Shown here piece by piece: positions 12,109 to 48,290 of a stretch of DNA of 64,000 bases (the first letter of the stretch is position 1; the number at the start of each line of letters is the position of its first letter). Both the position numbers and the translations under genes were made by a program. Origin of the DNA: Salpingoeca rosetta. Lineage: Eukaryota > Protista > Choanoflagellata. Location: assembly GCA_033442325.1 (NCBI GenBank), contig JAWQFM010000002.1, forward strand, positions 2,734,639 to 2,798,638. The letters run 5' to 3'. The notes below the pieces were generated by a model. The model made no database searches. It worked only from the letters and a program-made list of their open reading frames with translations, and was not told the DNA's origin.

Positions 12109-12225
12109 CTAGTTGGGCCCCTGGGCATCTGTCCTGCGCTCGCCTGTTGATTGTGGTTGTTGTTGCTGTGAGTGGGCAGGCACTGCAGGCACTGTTGGCT
12201 GTTCCGGCTTGTCCTTGGTCCCGCG

Positions 12226-12317
<92 letters not shown>

Positions 12318-12752
12318 GCTGCTGCGGTGTAGACTGTGCGATGGTGTCTCGGAAGAGCTGGAGCTTCTTGAGCGGCTTGATGATGTTGTCCTTGGGGATG
12401 GGGATGGTAGCGAGGCACGTGGGCATGTTCTCTGGCTGCTCGTTCCAGAGGTGGTGCGGGATGCCCGCCTCCCTCAGCTTCTCACTCAAGTTCAGCAGTT
12501 GCTGTTCGCTTTTCACCTGCAAGTGTACATATGTGTGTTGATTAGAGGGGGTGGGGGGACAGTGAAGGAGTCATGAGCAGAGGCGTGGGCGTAGACAGGT
12601 GTGGAGGTGTGGGTATGGCACGTGTGCAGAGATGTACATCAGGACACAGACAGACAGACAGACAGACAGACACAGACAGACACAGACACACACACACACA
12701 CAGACAGACAGACAGACAGACACACACACACACACAGACAGACAGACAGACA

Positions 12753-12800
<48 letters not shown>

Positions 12801-12990
12801 AACCAACCTCCTTGACGTGCTTGGTCATGTGAGGGACGTCGGCCGTGTATCGCTTGACATTGTCATGGTCCATGTTCTCAACAATGACAGCGATTGCGGC
12901 ATGAGCGCCCTGAGCCACAATCGACCCAATGCTCCACCCACACGCCCGCCACAAGTCTCGCCGCACCACAATCACCTGCACCAAGTCCAT
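12109..12990 (-). CDS. PTRHD1: PTH2-family peptidyl-tRNA hydrolase-like protein with a polyQ tail
   Basis: Exons 12990-12808 ([13 protein letters not shown]...[10 protein letters not shown]) and 12516-12109 ([16 protein letters not shown]...LKKLQLF), matching PTRHD1 motifs. Confidence 0.9.
12226..12324 (-). repeat. (CAA)n coding microsatellite giving 33 Gln
   Basis: 99-bp TTG/CTG run on the + strand, in frame in PTRHD1 exon 2. Confidence 0.95.
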
Positions 12991-13225
12991 CCCTGCTTGC
13001 TTGTCCTTCTTATTCTGCTGCTTTTTTCTTGCTTGCTTGCTGACCGATTTGTCCCCCAAGCAACACAAACAACAACAAACAGTAACGGTTGCTTGCAGCA
13101 CCCCACCCCCACTCCTCCCTCACCTCACGCCACCCACTCACACCACCCCCACTCCTCACATCACGCCACTCCACATCAACAGTCACCCCCCCCAACTCCT
13201 TTCTCACACCACCCCGTCGCTGACA

Positions 13226-16200
13226 ATGGCCTCGAGGGTCGGCAGCGCAACAGGCGACGACGGCGGGTTGGAACTGCGCAACGTCTCATCTCCACCCACG
13301 CCGCCAATGGATCTCGCGCAGGATGGCCGCCCGCAGTCCCGGCGCATCGCATCGGTCGTGCGCCGCGTCTCGCGAAGCGCCCGCCGGGCATCCTCGCCGC
13401 TGGTCCAAAGCGACGGCAGCACAGCCGCTGCCACCGACACCGCCGCTGCCACCGCGACGAGGACATCGACGCCGCTCACAGCCACAACAGCGTTTTCGGT
13501 GCGCACCACGCCCGACACAACCAAGCCGCGGCACCACAACTACAACGGCAGCGAGGAGGAGGAGGAGGACGACGACGACGAGGACGGATCGGCAGATGCA
13601 GAGGCAGTGACGCCCGGAAAGCTGGATGGCCACCTTGGGCACATCGAGACGGTGGTCGCCTGCTCGGACTCGCTGGCGCTCTCGGGTGCGGCAGACGGCG
13701 TGGTCAAGGTGTGGCGCATCGCCGATGATGGCCTGGAGCGCATCGCCGAGCTCAAGGGCCACGCAGAGGGCATCACGCAGGTGGTGCAGACCACAGATGG
13801 CACGCGCGCAATTACGCTCAGCAGCGACGAGCTGGTGCTCAAGGTGTGGGATTTATCGACGCGCAAGTGCCTGCGCACGTTTGACTTCTTTGAGTACCGC
13901 CAACAGGAGGAGGAGCACGCAGAGCCGTTTGGTGAGAGCGACGTCGATGGCCACCACGCGCCAACAACAACAACATCAGCAACAGCAACAACAGCGACAG
14001 CAACAAGACCATCCAAGGCAACGCCAGGGTCTCCAATCCATGTGAAACGCACATCAAAGCACAAGGGCCGGCACACGGTGCATGCACGCAAGAGTGGCGC
14101 GGACAGCAGCCATTCAAATCAAAGCGGAAGCGGCGGTGGTACGAATACGAAAGCGAACAGCAAGGGCAGTGCCAATGCTAATGCTGGTACTGGTGTTGGC
14201 GGTGATGAAAACGCTGATGATGCTGATGATGATGACGATGCCGATGATGACGACGACGAGGATGATGAGCTGGATGTTGACGCTGCTCATTCAGACACGC
14301 CGACCAGCCGCGCTGGCGGCAGCGGTGGCGGGCGACCGCCATGGAGGCAGGTGCGCATTGCGCCACCGCATCCTCCACATGGCAGCAAGAACACGACAGC
14401 AGCGGTGCCAGCGGCAACCAGCAAGGACATTGAGGTGGAGATTGATGCGTGGGTGACGACGATGGTGCTGTCTGCGGACAACAGCACGCTGTATGTGGCT
14501 GCCGGTGATCCGCCAAAGATCTACGCCTGGGATCTGAACACGTTCGTGTGGGAGCCCGTGGTTACAGAGGCCACGGGCATCGTGCAGTGCATGGCCATTG
14601 ACGCGACGCACAACCGCTTGTTCACCGCCACAGACACGGGCATGGTGGATGTGTGGGCGCTGCCGCCGCCCAAGGCATCAACGCCGTCGGCGCCGCTCAG
14701 GCACGTGGCCACCCTGCCTGCGTTTGCCGACAAGAAGAAGACGAAGAAGACTGCGGTGTGGTGGATTGCCGCTGCGCCCGACGGCACGTTTGTTGCGGCC
14801 GGCGGTGCGAGCAAGCACGTGCTGGTGTGGTCCAGCGACAGCGTGGCCGCAGCCATCAAGCGGGGCAGCGCAACAAGGACATCAGCAACAGCAGCAGCGA
14901 CCACAGCAGCAACAGCAGCAGCGGAGGTGGTGGGCGTCGCAGCGGTGATCAAGGGCCACGGCACGCATGTGTGCTGCGGCATCATCTCTGCGGACTCGAA
15001 CCGGCTGGTGACGGGAGACCAGACGGGCATCATCAAGGCGTGGTCGCTGCGGGAAGGCTTCCCCTGCGAGGCCACGCTGCCTGGCCACCGGTACGCGGTG
15101 TTGAGCGTGGCGCTGTCGCCGAGCGGGCGGACACTCGTCTCCGGCGGCGAGGCGTCGGAGCTGCGGGTGTGGGACATGGATGCGCTTGAGTGCAAAGGCG
15201 TCATGTGGTCGGTGAAGAAGATGATGCTGGACTTTATCCGCACGGAGCCCTCGCACGCGCTGGCCATGGCGCAGGAAGCGGAATTCCCTGGCCGCCACCT
15301 GGCCAGCGTGCGGCTGGCGCTGTTCCGGGCGGCGCTTGGCGCGGACACGGCGCTGGTGCTCAAGCTTGCAGAGGGCCTGTTTGCGCTGGAGGAGGCCGAG
15401 GTGGAGGCTGGGGCGCCACGCGCGCGCCTTCGCCCGGGCGAGTTTGCCGTGGTCGACCCGCACCTGCTTGATCGCCCAAAGCGGCTGCGGGCGCAGCTGT
15501 CGCGGCAGGAGGACCGCAAGGCGACGCGTGTTGCCACGCGGCCGCTGGTGCTGGACATGCACCAGCTGTGCGGGGAGCCGGGGGAGCGCAACACGCTCTT
15601 CTCCGAGCTGGTGGACAGCAACACGCCCGAGCTGTTCCAGTTCCTGCCGCTGCGCGCGGCGGTGCACTACCGGTGGACGCTGCAGGGCCGGGCATGGTTC
15701 CTGATTGAGACGGCACTGTACCTGGCGACGCTTGGGCTGCTGGTTGCGTTGTCGCTGACGACGACGGATTGGCGGCAGCCGCCGACGGGGGCAGACGCCG
15801 GGCTGACGATTGCGCTGCTTGTGCTCTTTGCCACGCTGCTTCTGGACGAGCTGCTACAGCTGATCACGCGCCCGCGCACGTACTTCACCGACATGTGGAA
15901 CATACTTGACCTTGGGCGAGGCGGCCTCATGTGCGCGTTCTGCGTGCTGCGCTTGCTTGGCGACGGAAACGCGCGCACGCCGCTGGCGGTGGTGGTGCTG
16001 CTGCAGTGGGTTGGCCTGCTGTACTTCCTGCTGCCCTTCAAGAACCTTGGCCCGATTGTGATCATGGTCATCCGCATCCTCCAGGACACGTATGTGTTCC
16101 TCGGGCTGCTGATCATTGTTGTGCTTGGCGCGACCAACAGCTTCTTTGTGTTCTTCCGGGGCTCTGGCGGCGGCACGGGCTTCTCCGACATTGCGCTGGG

Positions 16201-16828
16201 CGCGTTCACCACGGCCAACATGGTGCTGTTTGGCGACTACGACCAGTCTGTGTTTGTGGACAGCTCGGACTCGCTGGCGTCGCGGATTGTGTTTCTGGCG
16301 GTGATGTTTCTCTCGCTGGTGATCCTGCTGAACCTGCTGATTGCCATCCTGTCCGACTCGTACGAGCGCGTGCAGCAGAACTCGATGCACGAGCTGACGC
16401 TGGCCAAGGCGCGCATCCTGGAGGGCCAGTACCAGTCCATTCAGCGCTGGGCCAGCCAGTTTGTGCTGGTGACGCTGCTTCTGCCGCTGCTGGTGCTGTC
16501 GTCCCTTGTTGGGCTGCTCACGTTTGGGCACTGCGGGCATCGGCTGCTGGCTGTGGGGCAGTGGTTGCAGGGCATTTTCCTGCCGCGCAAGTGGCCGCAG
16601 CACCTGCTCGTTCTGATTCCGCAGGGGACCGAGCAGGGCGAAACGCCGCGGCACGAGTGGCAGGGCGTCCTGAACGAGCTCAAGACGTGCGTGCGCGTGT
16701 ATCATGGGGACACAACCAATGCGGTGGCGCATCTCCAGAGCAAGGTCAACACGGTTGAGCGGCGCCTCGATGCCATCGAACAGCGCATCACGGCCCTCCT
16801 CGACCGCCTCCATCCCCGCCAGCCCTAA
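13226..16828 (+). CDS. Intronless WD40-repeat plus 6-TM TRP-like cation channel (TRPW-like), about 1200 aa
   Basis: Single uninterrupted ORF. WD40 repeats (GH...VKVW, GH...LKVWD, GH...IKAWS, GH...LRVWD). S1-S6 helices with YFTDMWNILDL, a pore helix ending LFGDYD, S6 LLNLLIAILSDSYERV, and a C-terminal coiled coil. Confidence 0.9.
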   Translation: MASRVGSATGDDGGLELRNVSSPPTPPMDLAQDGRPQSRRIASVVRRVSRSARRASSPLVQSDGSTAAATDTAAATATRTSTPLTATTAFSVRTTPDTTKPRHHNYNGSEEEEEDDDDEDGSADAEAVTPGKLDGHLGHIETVVACSDSLALSGAADGVVKVWRIADDGLERIAELKGHAEGITQVVQTTDGTRAITLSSDELVLKVWDLSTRKCLRTFDFFEYRQQEEEHAEPFGESDVDGHHAPTTTTSATATTATATRPSKATPGSPIHVKRTSKHKGRHTVHARKSGADSSHSNQSGSGGGTNTKANSKGSANANAGTGVGGDENADDADDDDDADDDDDEDDELDVDAAHSDTPTSRAGGSGGGRPPWRQVRIAPPHPPHGSKNTTAAVPAATSKDIEVEIDAWVTTMVLSADNSTLYVAAGDPPKIYAWDLNTFVWEPVVTEATGIVQCMAIDATHNRLFTATDTGMVDVWALPPPKASTPSAPLRHVATLPAFADKKKTKKTAVWWIAAAPDGTFVAAGGASKHVLVWSSDSVAAAIKRGSATRTSATAAATTAATAAAEVVGVAAVIKGHGTHVCCGIISADSNRLVTGDQTGIIKAWSLREGFPCEATLPGHRYAVLSVALSPSGRTLVSGGEASELRVWDMDALECKGVMWSVKKMMLDFIRTEPSHALAMAQEAEFPGRHLASVRLALFRAALGADTALVLKLAEGLFALEEAEVEAGAPRARLRPGEFAVVDPHLLDRPKRLRAQLSRQEDRKATRVATRPLVLDMHQLCGEPGERNTLFSELVDSNTPELFQFLPLRAAVHYRWTLQGRAWFLIETALYLATLGLLVALSLTTTDWRQPPTGADAGLTIALLVLFATLLLDELLQLITRPRTYFTDMWNILDLGRGGLMCAFCVLRLLGDGNARTPLAVVVLLQWVGLLYFLLPFKNLGPIVIMVIRILQDTYVFLGLLIIVVLGATNSFFVFFRGSGGGTGFSDIALGAFTTANMVLFGDYDQSVFVDSSDSLASRIVFLAVMFLSLVILLNLLIAILSDSYERVQQNSMHELTLAKARILEGQYQSIQRWASQFVLVTLLLPLLVLSSLVGLLTFGHCGHRLLAVGQWLQGIFLPRKWPQHLLVLIPQGTEQGETPRHEWQGVLNELKTCVRVYHGDTTNAVAHLQSKVNTVERRLDAIEQRITALLDRLHPRQP

Positions 16829-16847
16829 AGACTGTTTCTTCTGCATG

Positions 16848-16947
16848 GTGCTGTTTTGTGTGCTGTTTTGTGTGCTGTTTTGTGTGCTGTTTTGTGTGCT
16901 GTTTTGTGTGCTGTTTTGTGTGCTGTTTTGTGTGCTGTTTTGTGTGC
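16848..16947. repeat. Perfect 12-bp tandem repeat (GTGCTGTTTTGT)x8 just after the channel stop codon
   Basis: Directly visible in the sequence. Confidence 0.95.
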
Positions 16948-17602
16948 ATAACAGTAGCAGTAGCAGTAGCAGTAGCAGTGGCGGTAGCAGTAGCAGTGGC
17001 GGGGGAAGAGGAGGAAGTGTGGGGGGGGGGCGTTAAGCGGTTGTTGGTGTTTGTTGTTGAGATGTGGAAGCCTTTGTGTTTGCCTTTGCCCTTTTGTTTT
17101 CTGATAGCTGATTCCATGCAATTTTACGGGACGGAACTGCTGAAATTTTTTAAAATTTTTGCAGAATAGAAAAAACCCACAAGTGTGCAAACTGAATCAA
17201 TTTTATGATATGTTAGAGCGCTTTGTGAGAAGAGCATCTTTGCGCAGAGGCAAGACGGCGCGCAGTGAGGTGCAAACCGAGCGGCTGTTTTTGCTGATTG
17301 AAAACTTTCAGTTCCAATACCCCGGGCTGGCTTCATTGCTTGACCCAATATTTGGAAACCGAAAGGTTAAACCCCTCTCAACACAAAACAAAGAAATGTA
17401 CCTGAAGATGGCTTTTGCAGCCTTCTGCGTGTGTCTGTATGTGTGTGTGTCTGTGTCATTCCATTGCATCACAACAGCTATCACCATCGTCACAACCATC
17501 ATCATCATCATCGTTTACAGCGAGGAACGCAACAAGAGCACATGTCATGAGGAGTGTAACAGAAAAAGCAGTACTGACAAAGGAGAGTGCACCCCGGTCA
17601 AT

Positions 17603-20732
<3,130 letters not shown>

Positions 20733-45923: not shown

Positions 45924-47908
45924 CATCGCATACGCCACTCACACGCACACCGCACTCACACTCACAAAAACACACTCACTGATACGCTCGCACACACACA
46001 CACACATGCACACGTCCAGGGCGGGAGAGAGGCCGCTGGCTGAGGAGGATGACCAGGACACTGAAGCTGACGAGGATGAGGAACGCGCCGTCGAGCACGT
46101 GAGCGCACCATCCACAACAACAACCACAACAGCAACCACAACAGCAACCACAACAGCAACCACAACAGCAATCACAACAGCAACATCAACAGCTGCTCGG
46201 TCCCCACAGCGTCGACCAGCACACAGCACACGCCAAGGGTCCCACGAGCCACTGCAGTTCTGGAAGACACTCGAGCGCGTGCGTCAGCGTCCGCCAGCTG
46301 ACGACAGCCAAGCCGCCCTCGCCTTCTCCAACACGGTGTGCGCGCGCGTGTGTATGTGTGCTTGTGCATGTGTGCTTGTGCTTGTAAGCTTGTATGTGTG
46401 CTTGTGTGTGTGTGCTTGTGTGTGCTTGGAATTGCTCTGTGTGTTTGCGCTTGTGTGTGCTTGGAATCGGTGTGTGTGTGCGTGTGTGTGCGTACGTGTG
46501 TGTGTGTGTGAACCTGAATTACTTCTGCACCTCCTCATGCAGCACACACGCACACACGCACACACGCACACTCACATACTCACACACACACTCACTCACA
46601 CACTCACACAGGCGCAGCAGAGGCGGGCGTACTATTCGGCCATGTATGGGAGCAGTAGCAGTGGGAGTGAGGACGAGGGTGGTGACGGGCATGGCCAGCG
46701 AGACAGTCATGTGCAACAAGACGATGACGGCAGCGCGCCTCCTGCGCCCAAACGCGCACGCAAGAGCCGCAAGCCCGCACGCGGAACCGAGCAAGCCGTA
46801 CCCACGTCACCACATGGCAGGCACGTGCAGTCGCCCAGAAGAAAGATGAGCACAACGTCCCGTGCTGGCCGCGCCACCGCCACGTCCACTGCCACTGCCA
46901 CTGCTGGTGATGGCGATGATCGTGATATGCGCGCAATGGCATCGTCAGCGTCGTCAGCTCTGCGGGCACGCCACGCCACCCGCAGCGGGAAGACGAATAG
47001 GAAGGCACGGGGAGCGTCAGTTGCACCTGTCGCGAAGCGTGGAACTCAGCGTTCCTCACGGCAGCAACGGCATGCACGCGCCTACGAAGACGAAGAGCAA
47101 GAGGAAGAGGAGGATCATGACGAAGAGTATGATGATGATGGCGAAGAAGAAGGTGATGATGATGATGATGGTGAGGAACAAGTTGACGATGACGGTGATG
47201 TGGACGAAGTTGCACGGCGCGTGGGTAAACGGCGGGACCACCATCACGGTCGAGGCACACGCACACTCGCGCATACGCGACGATCACGACGGCGACATCA
47301 TCATCATCATCATCATCATCACCGCCGCGACCAGTCATCACCGTCGCCATCGCCATCGCCATCATCATCACGGTCGTCATCGGATGACATGGACGGGTTC
47401 CTTGCGTACCATGAGGCGCACAAGACAGGCGGAGCACGTGCAAAGGCAGCGGGGCGAGCCGGCGGCATGGCGTCATCGCGGCGGGCTCAGCGGCAGCAGC
47501 AGCAGCAACAAGACACCGACAGCAGTAGCGGTAGCAGCGATGCTGGCGAGGATGACCACAACGCAATCATGGGCGCGCGTGTGCGGCGAATGCGTGAGCG
47601 GCGCCGCTACGTCGCTGCTGTGACGGCCAAACCCCGGCCCGACCTCCCCTCGTCCCTGCATCAGCTCCCATCACCGCAGCCGCACGTCGTGTGGATGCCG
47701 GCACAGCACGCGGTGGGGGAGGGTGGGTCGCCGTGGGCGCGGCTGCGGCGAACACAGCTGTCCATCCCGGGGCCCATCAACCAATTTCTGCGCCCGTACC
47801 AGCGGGAGGGGGTGGAGACGATGGCAAAGTGGCTTTTGGATGGGCACGGCGGCGTCCTCGCAGACGACATGGTGCGTGTATGTGCGTGTGTGTGTGTGTC
47901 TGCTTGTG

Positions 47909-47940
<32 letters not shown>

Positions 47941-48290
47941 TGTGCGTGTGTGTGTGTGTGAGGCTGTGTGTGTGTGTGTGTGTGTGTGTGTGGACACGAT
48001 TGGAACAGTGGCCATCGACATGTGTTGCGTCATTGGACTGACTTGGAACCGCTATGCACCGCCCTGTTGACAGGGTCTTGGAAAGACTGTGCAAGTGATT
48101 GCGCTGCTTGCGACGCTGTTGCAGAAGACGTATGATGCCGCCGTTGACGCGATCCCAAAGCTTGCAGGTGAGTTGGCACCAAATGTGCACTGCGATGCTG
48201 CTGTAACATATCTGCTCACGTGCGTATTTAACAAGCACACACTCACGTACATACATCACACACCCATACGCTCTCTCTCTCTCTCACCGA

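What the first reader, a model, noticed from the sequence alone, without database searches (positions are those of the whole stretch)
13226..16828. Intronless WD40-propeller / TRP-channel fusion
Seen: a 3.6-kb single-exon ORF in a window where every other gene has introns. WD40 repeats, interrupted by long acidic and Thr/Ala-rich inserts, precede a 6-TM channel with a TRP-type S6 (LNLLIAILSDSYERV), an extra hydrophobic segment after S6 (FVLVTLLLPLLVLSSLVGLLTFG) and a terminal coiled coil. Known: animal TRP families carry ankyrin repeats or MHR domains at this position, not WD40. I recall WD40-TRPs being proposed as a choanoflagellate 'TRPW' family, which should be verified. Inference: a little-characterised sensory channel whose propeller may be a ligand or partner platform; the lack of introns suggests retroposition or lateral origin.
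Basis: partly seen in the sequence, partly recalled or inferred. Interest (0 to 1): 0.75.

Follow-up and report, generated by a model that had tools for sequence, protein, structure and literature searches.

The report
Known choanoflagellate TRPW1 channel gene
This uninterrupted 3.6-kb gene is TRPW1 of the choanoflagellate Salpingoeca rosetta, a WD40-propeller TRP ion channel that a June 2026 preprint already solved by cryo-EM and showed to sense a bacterial fatty acid, so it is real and interesting but already known.

Summary
Window 13226-16828(+) is one 1200-codon open frame. It encodes a seven-bladed WD40 propeller with two disordered low-complexity loops, a TRPV-like linker, a six-helix TRP channel, a TRP helix, a hydrophobic helical hairpin and a C-terminal coiled coil.

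The genome is Salpingoeca rosetta and the gene is TRPW1 (PTSG_01562 / EGD80980). Both published CRISPR guides, the tagging arm and one deletion arm for "TRPW1" match the window exactly; the other deletion arm differs at one base. They bracket this ORF. All seven residues named for TRPW1 fall at their published numbers.

The family was named in 2026 (two preprints, one now in PNAS). TRPW1 itself already has cryo-EM structures, patch-clamp data, a knockout and a flagellar localisation.

"Little-characterised" is therefore out of date. The agonists bind in the membrane domain, not the propeller.

The lack of introns does not single out this gene. At least six other S. rosetta TRPW paralogues are also single open frames with the same high third-position GC. 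There is no poly(A) or duplication scar, and the nearest relatives are choanoflagellate. Lateral origin is unsupported.

RNA reads could not be obtained. This scan has already filed other TRPW paralogues of this genome as known.

The parts
13226..16828 (+). Complete TRPW1 coding sequence (1200 codons plus stop), with no interruption in the genome
   Evidence: ORF listing and translation. The seven published TRPW1 residue numbers fit only this start. EukProt/EGD80980 channel numbering 831-1052 is identical.
12991..13225 (.). 235-bp divergent intergenic region shared with the PTH2 gene. It is the presumed promoter and holds an X-box-like GTCCCCCAAGCAAC at 13051-13064 (one mismatch to GTNRCC-NN-RGYAAC).
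   Evidence: Sequence and motif scan. The motif is weak evidence only. It is consistent with the log2FC of -2.27 for PTSG_01562 in the cRFXa mutant (Data S4).
13226..13600 (+). N-terminal Ser/Thr/Ala/Arg-rich and acidic region (aa 1-125), with no detected domain
   Evidence: Composition. Pfam finds no domain there.
13304..13323 (-). [quoted passage not shown]
   Evidence: Exact 20/20 match, the only one in the window. Sequence from Table S3.
13601..15190 (+). Seven-bladed WD40 beta-propeller (aa 126-655)
   Evidence: Pfam WD40 and propeller families. AF2 gives 28 strands at pLDDT above 90. Blade-by-blade alignment with paralogues. The cryo-EM description reports a 7-blade propeller.
13889..14425 (+). 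Insert 1 between blades 2 and 3 (aa 222-400): a disordered loop rich in Ala, Asp, Gly, Thr and Ser, including a poly-Asp run
   Evidence: pLDDT below 50. GC3 is 0.52 against 0.79-0.90 in the folded parts. Internal tandem repeats have periods 15, 3 and 18. Absent from P0001 and the paralogues.
14831..14941 (+). Insert 2 between blades 5 and 6 (aa 536-572): a Thr/Ala-rich loop
   Evidence: Low pLDDT at aa ~556-567 and GC3 of 0.57. Paralogue P0003 has a Gln-rich insert at the same loop.
15191..15670 (+). Hinge/linker and pre-S1 region (aa 656-815), TRPV-like, with beta-strands
   Evidence: AF2. VIA alignments to the TRPV linker domains start at model residues 1-11.
15671..16366 (+). Transmembrane domain S1-S6 with pore helix and LFGDYD filter region (aa 816-1047). 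It contains ExxQ (E875, Q878) and NxxD (N892, D895), and the agonist-pocket residues E828, W891, R898, Q927, I949 and R950.
   Evidence: Pfam Ion_trans, PDB sequence hits, AF2, fold search, residue checks.
16373..16435 (+). TRP helix (aa ~1050-1070), continuous with S6. It carries R1063. The canonical TRP-box Trp is replaced by Leu.
   Evidence: AF2 helix at aa 1016-1070, R1063, alignment.
16442..16579 (+). Post-TRP helical hairpin (aa 1073-1118): a fully hydrophobic helix followed by an amphipathic helix.
   Evidence: AF2 helices at aa 1073-1099 and 1104-1118. Present only in TRPW1, P0001, P0002 and P0003, and partly in L018; absent from the other paralogues.
16601..16621 (+). C-terminal beta-strand HLLVLIP (aa 1126-1132), followed by the conserved WQG(V/M)L motif
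   Evidence: AF2 strand. VIA alignments to TRPV channels run on to model residue ~435. Conserved in the alignment. That this matches the TRPV C-terminal strand is inferred.
16715..16810 (+). C-terminal coiled-coil helix (aa 1164-1195)
   Evidence: AF2 helix. The paper reports a C-terminal coiled coil and a coiled-coil-focused map.
16776..16825 (+). Published 50-nt homology arm for C-terminal ALFA tagging of TRPW1. It ends at the last sense codon.
   Evidence: Exact 50/50 match.
16826..16845 (-). Target of the published 'guide RNA at C-terminus of TRPW1', overlapping the stop codon
   Evidence: Exact 20/20 match. The deletion R-primer arm matches 16830-16878(-).
16848..16997 (+). Repeats downstream of the stop, presumably in the 3' UTR: a perfect 12-mer (GTGCTGTTTTGT) x8.3, then (CAGTAG)n. 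There is no poly(A) tract.
   Evidence: Tandem Repeats Finder and sequence.

Best explanation
This is the Salpingoeca rosetta gene TRPW1 (PTSG_01562, protein EGD80980).

Architecture: each subunit has a cytoplasmic seven-bladed WD40 propeller, a TRPV-like linker, a six-helix TRP-type channel domain with a TRP helix, and a C-terminal coiled coil. Four subunits form the channel.

Function, as reported in the published work and not tested here:
- It is a ligand-gated, Ca2+-permeable, non-selective cation channel blocked by ruthenium red.
- It sits at the distal flagellum.
- A mono-unsaturated branched fatty acid from the prey bacterium Algoriphagus, and the synthetic agonist RS 39604, bind a vanilloid-like pocket. 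That pocket lies between S1-S4, the S4-S5 linker, the TRP helix and the neighbouring S5.
- Opening causes flagellar arrest, so cells slow down and gather near prey.

Shown here:
- the identity of the locus;
- the domain anatomy;
- the TRP fold;
- intron-free open frames in many paralogues;
- R950, the arginine modelled as binding the ligand carboxylate, is unique to TRPW1 among 13 aligned family members;
- the post-TRP hydrophobic hairpin is restricted to the TRPW1 subclade.

Inferred:
- The hairpin dips into the inner leaflet rather than crossing the membrane, because both of its flanks are cytoplasmic.
- The two low-complexity inserts are disordered propeller loops.
For: Identity:
- P0003, 'WD-40 repeat protein [Salpingoeca rosetta]', is 100% identical to a paralogue locus of this genome.
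- The TRPW1 guides and homology arms of Table S3 match 13304-13323, 16826-16845, 16776-16825 and 16830-16878 exactly. They match 13257-13306 with one mismatch.
- E828, W891, R898, Q927, I949, R950 and R1063 all fall at their published numbers. Of the 950 numbering offsets tried, no other gives more than 3 of 7.
- The channel domain equals EGD80980 / PTSG_01562 / EukProt P010108, labelled best_subfamily=TRPW.

Anatomy:
- Pfam WD40 and Ion_trans.
- AF2 models.
- PDB sequence hits are only TRP channels, best TRPV5/6 at E 3e-12.
- Foldseek's listed matches (top 50) are all group-1 TRPs.
- VIA gives Z 20-21 to TRPV2, TRPV1, TRPV5 and TRPV6 over model residues 1-437.

Function: taken from bioRxiv 10.64898/2026.06.15.732144.

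Family: named in PNAS 2026 (PMC13663828) and bioRxiv 10.64898/2026.06.15.732245.
Against: - No text I could read says 'TRPW1 = PTSG_01562' in words; the accession labels are in a figure. The link rests on the primers, guides and residue numbers. I regard that as decisive.
- The published deletion primer differs from the window at one base (13274: C here, G in the primer).
[quoted passage not shown] The paper therefore does not independently prove that the native mRNA is unspliced.
- I could not obtain reads.
- The deposited coordinates (35WH, 35WI) are not in the structure libraries available here.
Confidence: 0.97

Rival explanations
1. The native transcript is spliced inside the ORF. One or both low-complexity inserts would be in-frame introns that the annotation missed, so the native protein would be shorter than 1200 aa.
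For: The inserts have GC3 of 0.52-0.57, close to the genomic background and well below the 0.79-0.90 of the folded parts. They are absent from the transcript-derived relative P0001 and are predicted disordered. A GTGAGA lies near the start of insert 1. The published CDS came from the annotation, not from cloned cDNA.
Against: Frame 0 has no stop in 179 codons, while frame 2 has 16. All tandem repeats inside the ORF have periods of 3, 15 or 18, whereas repeats in the neighbouring introns and spacers have periods of 2, 3, 4, 6, 10, 12, 16, 18 and 22. The inserts sit exactly in inter-blade loops, and paralogue P0003 has its own low-complexity inserts in two of the same loops. The full-length protein folds and works in HEK cells.
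Confidence: 0.08
2. The gene is a recent retrocopy or a laterally acquired gene, as the reader inferred from the lack of introns.
For: One 3.6-kb exon in a genome that, as I recall it, averages about seven introns per gene (not checked here). Both neighbours are spliced. The paralogues lie on many different contigs, as retrocopies would.
Against: At least six other paralogues (L013-L018) carry the propeller and the channel in one open frame of 1146-1616 aa. GC3 of 0.79 lies within the paralogue range of 0.74-0.89. There is no poly(A) tract downstream. Paralogues are only 25-53% identical over the channel region, so any duplication is old. The nearest relatives are choanoflagellate proteins. 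The literature reports that the family is found widely in eukaryotes. An earlier scan note reports a ~41-exon paralogue, so intron load varies within the family.
Confidence: 0.05
3. Two adjacent genes, a WD40 protein and a channel, are read together by chance or by a gene-model error.
For: None beyond the general possibility. The 160-aa linker and the inserts are poorly conserved.
Against: There is one frame without a stop. The same order of domains occurs in six paralogous single ORFs. It also occurs in a transcript-derived protein marked 'type:complete' in another species' transcriptome entry (P0001). The cryo-EM structure shows the propeller and the channel in one chain.
Confidence: 0.01

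Closest known systems
TRPW1 of Salpingoeca rosetta (Coyle et al., bioRxiv 10.64898/2026.06.15.732144; PDB 35WH/35WI as cited there)
   Same: It is the same gene. Guides, homology arms, residue numbering and the channel-domain sequence coincide.
   Different: One base differs between the published primer and the window at 13274. Nothing else differs.
TRPW family (WD40-TRP channels; PNAS 2026, PMC13663828; 17-18 members in S. rosetta)
   Same: N-terminal WD40 propeller, group-1 TRP-like six-helix domain, TRP helix and C-terminal coiled coil. The ExxQ/NxxD motifs in S2/S3 are conserved across most members.
   Different: TRPW1 and its closest relatives (PTSG_11274, the P0003 gene and P0001) carry a roughly 45-residue hydrophobic hairpin after the TRP helix that the other paralogues lack. 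R950 is unique to TRPW1. TRPW1 has one propeller and no ankyrin repeats, while some members have two propellers or ankyrin repeats.
Animal TRPV channels (TRPV1, 2, 5, 6)
   Same: These are the best sequence and fold matches: E 3e-12 and Z 20-21 over the linker, S1-S6, the TRP helix and the region just after it. The lipid or agonist pocket is in the vanilloid position.
   Different: No ankyrin repeat domain, with a WD40 propeller in its place. A C-terminal coiled coil, as in TRPM and TRPA. A post-TRP hairpin. Identity is only 13-20%.
TRPM channels (TRPM2, TRPM4, TRPM8)
   Same: ExxQ in S2 and NxxD in S3 match the motif of the TRPM Ca2+ site, which I recall from memory. The paper's methods mention S2-S3 calcium sites in the TRPW1 structure. 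C-terminal coiled coil.
   Different: No SLOG/MHR domain. Sequence matches are weaker, at E about 1e-7.
'Trpw/trpw1' of vertebrates (Mol Biol Evol 2024, PMC11979771)
   Same: The name only.
   Different: That name was proposed for the ankyrin-repeat TRPVL clade of animals. It is a nomenclature clash, not a relative of the WD40 family.

Membership tests
TRPW (WD40-TRP channels) | Voltage-gated-like six-helix ion-transport domain | tested here: met
   Pfam PF00520 at aa 830-1053, E 4.9e-13, 49 bits against a cutoff of 25. AF2 shows S1-S6 and a pore helix.
TRPW (WD40-TRP channels) | N-terminal WD40 repeats forming a beta-propeller in the same polypeptide | tested here: met
   Pfam WD40 at 77 bits against a cutoff of 27. 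AF2 gives seven four-stranded blades at pLDDT above 90. One open frame.
TRPW (WD40-TRP channels) | Transmembrane domain closest to group-1 TRP channels | tested here: met
   All 60 best PDB sequence hits are TRP channels. The 50 Foldseek matches listed are all group-1 TRPs. VIA Z is 20-21.
TRPW (WD40-TRP channels) | Groups in the TRPW clade in a tree of channel domains | not tested
   I built no tree with other TRP families. Indirect support: the best relatives in the protein database and in the genome itself are WD40-channel proteins. The authors' own data file labels this exact sequence best_subfamily=TRPW.
TRPW (WD40-TRP channels) | TRP helix after S6 and a C-terminal coiled coil | tested here: met
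   AF2 gives S6 continuous with a helix to aa 1070 and a terminal helix at aa 1164-1195. The paper describes the same elements. The TRP-box Trp is not conserved.
TRPW1 (the specific gene) | Published guide RNAs, homology arms and residue numbers map to the locus | tested here: met
   A control with shifted numbering found no other offset with more than 3 of 7 matches.
TRPV | N-terminal ankyrin repeat domain | tested here: not met
   No Ank family among the 25 Pfam families listed (of 34 at E up to 1); the region is a WD40 propeller.
TRPM | N-terminal SLOG/MHR domain | tested here: not met
   No LSDAT/SLOG match. Paralogue PTSG_11274 (P0002) does carry one.

The most novel reading that the evidence does not exclude
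Two features that I did not find in the text I searched could matter. ('Intron' gave no hit in either preprint or in the first preprint's supplements, and 're-entrant' gave none in those supplements.)

(1) The hydrophobic post-TRP hairpin (aa 1073-1118) is confined to the TRPW1 subclade, as are pocket residues R898 and Q927. Together with the TRPW1-only R950, it may be a membrane-embedded element that helps tune this subclade to lipid ligands.

(2) A large part of the S. rosetta TRPW expansion consists of dispersed, intron-free genes in a genome I recall as intron-rich. This would fit growth of the family by RNA-mediated duplication.
Probability: 0.25. Interest if true: 0.4.

Novelty: already known. 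Interest (0 to 1): 0.22.

Why it matters
[quoted passage not shown] That case has already been made in the 2026 literature.

This check adds a firm mapping of the published gene to this locus, a correction of the intron argument, and a few small leads:
- a hairpin specific to the TRPW1 subclade;
- an arginine in the ligand pocket that is unique to TRPW1;
- low-GC3 disordered propeller loops;
- the point that the unspliced gene model has not been verified by cDNA in the text I could read.

Tried and rejected
- **The protein's own database entry.** The word-based protein search did not return the window's own protein. I identified it through the papers' supplements instead.
- **Large searches.** I did not use the large representative search or the metagenome and genome scans, because identity was settled without them.
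- **Family tree.** I built no tree with other TRP families.
- **Text search for the accession.** Searching the supplement for 'PTSG_01562 = TRPW1' in words found nothing. Primers and guides gave the link.
- **RFX motif.** A scan for a canonical X-box gave only a one-mismatch site. That is too weak to claim regulation.
- **Splice sites.** Splice-site pattern scans inside the ORF are not decisive either way.
- **Tetramer prediction.** Complex prediction was not run, because a tetramer structure is already published.
Full report
**What is in the sequence.**
The open frame 12929-16828(+) is the longest in the window. The earlier in-frame ATG lies within the first exon of a divergent PTH2 gene on the minus strand. 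That exon starts at 12990 and matches Pfam PTH2 at E 2.5e-8. The real intergenic space is therefore 12991-13225.

Pfam finds WD40 repeats and many propeller families in aa 130-680, and Ion_trans at aa 830-1053. A sequence search of the solved structures with aa 701-1200 returns only TRP channels among its 60 best hits:
- TRPV5/6 at E about 1e-12;
- Inactive/Nanchung, TRPM2, TRPM8, a Chlamydomonas TRP-like channel, YVC1, TRPC3/6 and TRPV3 below that.

**Which organism and which gene.**
The genome is 55.4 Mb. A database protein named 'WD-40 repeat protein [Salpingoeca rosetta]' (P0003) is 100% identical over 908 aa to a paralogous locus of this genome. The organism is therefore S. rosetta.

A literature search found three 2026 papers on WD40-TRP channels of choanoflagellates:
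- Two are versions of one study that names the family TRPW, with 18 members in S. rosetta.
- The third (Coyle et al., bioRxiv 10.64898/2026.06.15.732144) characterises one member, TRPW1.

The third paper names residues E828, W891, R898, Q927, I949, R950 and R1063. All seven are found at exactly those numbers in the 1200-aa translation from 13226. I slid the numbering over 950 offsets, and no other offset gave more than 3 of 7.

Table S3 of that paper gives the CRISPR reagents:
- The 'guide near the N-terminus of TRPW1' matches 13304-13323(-) exactly.
- The 'guide at the C-terminus' matches 16826-16845(-), across the stop codon, exactly.
- The 50-nt arm for C-terminal ALFA tagging matches 16776-16825(+) exactly. 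It ends at the last sense codon.
- The two deletion arms match 13257-13306 (one mismatch, at 13274) and 16830-16878.

The channel domain is letter for letter the entry EGD80980 in the authors' Data S1, listed as PTSG_01562 in Data S4. It is also EukProt S. rosetta P010108, with alignment range 831-1052 and the label best_subfamily=TRPW. The locus is therefore TRPW1.

**What is known about it (from the paper, not tested here).**
- TRPW1 expressed in HEK cells is a ligand-activated, Ca2+-permeable, non-selective cation channel blocked by ruthenium red.
- It responds to the synthetic compound RS 39604. It also responds to a mono-unsaturated branched fatty acid (15M-9E) from outer-membrane vesicles of the prey bacterium Algoriphagus.
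- It localises to the distal flagellum.
- Agonists cause flagellar arrest and slower swimming, and a knockout reduces this.
- Cryo-EM at 2.4 A shows a domain-swapped tetramer with a 7-blade WD40 propeller per subunit, a pre-S1 region, a TRP helix and a coiled coil.
- RS binds between S1-S4, the S4-S5 linker, the TRP helix and the neighbouring S5, in the position of the vanilloid pocket of TRPV1.
- PTSG_01562 is down about five-fold (log2FC -2.27) in a cRFXa mutant.

**Anatomy checked here.**
AlphaFold2 of aa 126-660, run with a six-sequence alignment, gives 28 strands in seven blades at pLDDT above 90. Two stretches fall below 50: aa ~237-399 and aa ~556-567. Aligned with paralogues and with the transcript-derived relative P0001, the inserts lie precisely between blades 2/3 and 5/6. 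A smaller one lies between blades 4/5. Paralogue P0003 has its own Ser- and Gln-rich inserts in two of the same loops.

AlphaFold2 of aa 700-1200 (13 sequences, mean pLDDT 71) gives:
- S1-S6 and a pore helix;
- S6 continuous with the TRP helix (aa 1016-1070);
- two helices at aa 1073-1099 and 1104-1118;
- a strand at aa 1126-1132;
- a terminal helix at aa 1164-1195.

Foldseek against the PDB lists only group-1 TRP channels in the top 50. VIA-align gives Z 20-21 (rmsd 3.8-5.4 A, 311-339 residues aligned) to TRPV2, TRPV1, TRPV5 and TRPV6 over model residues 1-437. This span reaches from the linker to the strand after the TRP helix. TRPW1's own structure is not in the libraries, which end in April 2026.

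**The 'extra hydrophobic segment'.**
It is real, and it is the first helix of the hairpin at aa 1073-1118. In the 13-sequence alignment the hairpin is present in TRPW1, P0001, P0002 (PTSG_11274) and P0003, and partly in L018. It is absent from the other paralogues, which pass directly from the TRP helix to the conserved strand and WQG(V/M)L motif.

The TRP helix before it and the strand after it are both cytoplasmic, and the second helix is short and amphipathic. I therefore infer a re-entrant or in-plane membrane element rather than a seventh crossing. I could not inspect coordinates, so this is inference.

**Pocket and ion-site residues.**
- ExxQ (E875, Q878) in S2 and NxxD (N892, D895) in S3 are conserved in most family members. 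W891 is invariant.
- R898 together with Q927 occurs only in the TRPW1 subclade (R898 alone recurs in three more distant members).
- R950 is modelled by the authors as a salt-bridge partner of the fatty-acid carboxylate. It is unique to TRPW1 among the 13 sequences; the others have Q, E, A, K or H.
- This fits the reported selectivity of the bacterial extract for TRPW1 among seven tested paralogues. It remains a correlation.

**Introns.**
The ORF has no interruption. The public gene model has the same numbering.

The coding sequence used in the paper was taken from the Ensembl annotation and synthesised.

Arguments that the inserts are coding:
- Frame 0 has no stop in 179 codons, against 16 in frame 2.
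- All tandem repeats inside the ORF have periods of 3, 15 or 18. Those in the flanking introns and spacers have periods of 2, 3, 4, 6, 10, 12, 16, 18 and 22.

An argument for caution is that GC3 of the inserts is 0.52-0.57, against 0.79-0.90 elsewhere in the gene. I read this as young, slippage-prone low-complexity coding sequence. I leave about 8% for in-frame splicing.

**Retroposition or lateral origin.**
A search of the genome itself with the channel region gives 23 matches on many contigs. Six further loci (L013-L018) hold a single open frame of 1146-1616 aa that spans both the WD40 repeats and the channel region. Pfam lists WD40 or propeller families for all six. It lists Ion_trans for L013, L014 and L016. 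For L015, L017 and L018 the channel is placed in the same frame by tblastn. Their GC3 is 0.74-0.89, against 0.79 for TRPW1. Other paralogues are split, for example PTSG_07515.

Earlier notes of this scan describe one intron-free paralogue and one with about 41 exons. I did not check those notes.

Downstream of the stop there is no poly(A) tract. There is a perfect 12-mer array followed by (CAGTAG)n. The nearest relatives are choanoflagellate proteins at 45-46% identity.

The missing introns are thus a trait of a good part of the family, not a mark of this gene. Nothing points to lateral transfer. An old retroposition at the base of an intron-free group is possible but untested.

**Verdict.**
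The gene is already known, and it is in fact the reference member of its family. The scan has met other TRPW paralogues of this genome before and filed them as known. Interest for the scan is low, because the main result is a correct re-discovery. The small leads listed under the novel case are incremental.

Noticed in passing
window 12571-12990 (-), with an intron around 12644-12800: A divergent neighbour is a peptidyl-tRNA hydrolase PTH2 gene (Pfam E 2.5e-8). Its first exon ends in an (ACAC)/(CAGA)n-rich intron. It shares a 235-bp promoter region with TRPW1.
   Followed up: partly
window 17603-18259 (-): A convergent neighbour encodes an AAA+ ATPase (AAA and AAA_lid_3 domains) split by a TG/CA-repeat intron. 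Its 3' end faces the TRPW1 3' end.
   Followed up: partly
window 16848-16947 and 12225-12318: Two perfect tandem arrays: a 12-mer GTGCTGTTTTGT x8.3 just downstream of the TRPW1 stop (presumed 3' UTR), and (GTT)31 upstream. Both show 100% matches, so they are probably young and possibly polymorphic.
   Followed up: no
window 13274: The published TRPW1 deletion primer has G where the window has C. That would change codon 17 from CTG (Leu) to GTG (Val). It could be a typing error, a strain difference or an assembly difference.
   Followed up: no
window 13051-13064: GTCCCCCAAGCAAC is one mismatch from the RFX X-box pattern GTNRCC-NN-RGYAAC, 162 bp upstream of the ATG. Only 14 such near-matches (all spacings, plus strand) occur in the 64 kb. 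It is suggestive, given that the gene is down in the cRFXa mutant, but weak.
   Followed up: partly
L020 (G000:C36:579000-588999) = P0002, PTSG_11274: The closest paralogue of the TRPW1 channel domain (53% identity) carries SLOG and NUDIX domains instead of a propeller. A TRPW1-type channel module has been combined with TRPM2-type ends. The preprint notes the domains, and the hairpin is shared with TRPW1.
   Followed up: partly
literature (PMC11979771): The names 'Trpw' and 'trpw1' were proposed in 2024 for the ankyrin-repeat TRPVL clade of animals. This clashes with the 2026 use for WD40-TRP channels.
   Followed up: yes
window 46006-47961 (+): A 651-aa ATG-started ORF in a GC-rich stretch (0.61) has no Pfam match. 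It may be another long single exon, which bears on the claim that every other gene in the window has introns.
   Followed up: partly
L019 (G000:C17:1016000-1025000): In this TRPW paralogue the channel region is split between a 1529-aa open frame (S1-S4) and a 357-aa open frame (S5-S6) about 40 bp apart. This could be a short intron, a frameshift or a broken copy.
   Followed up: no
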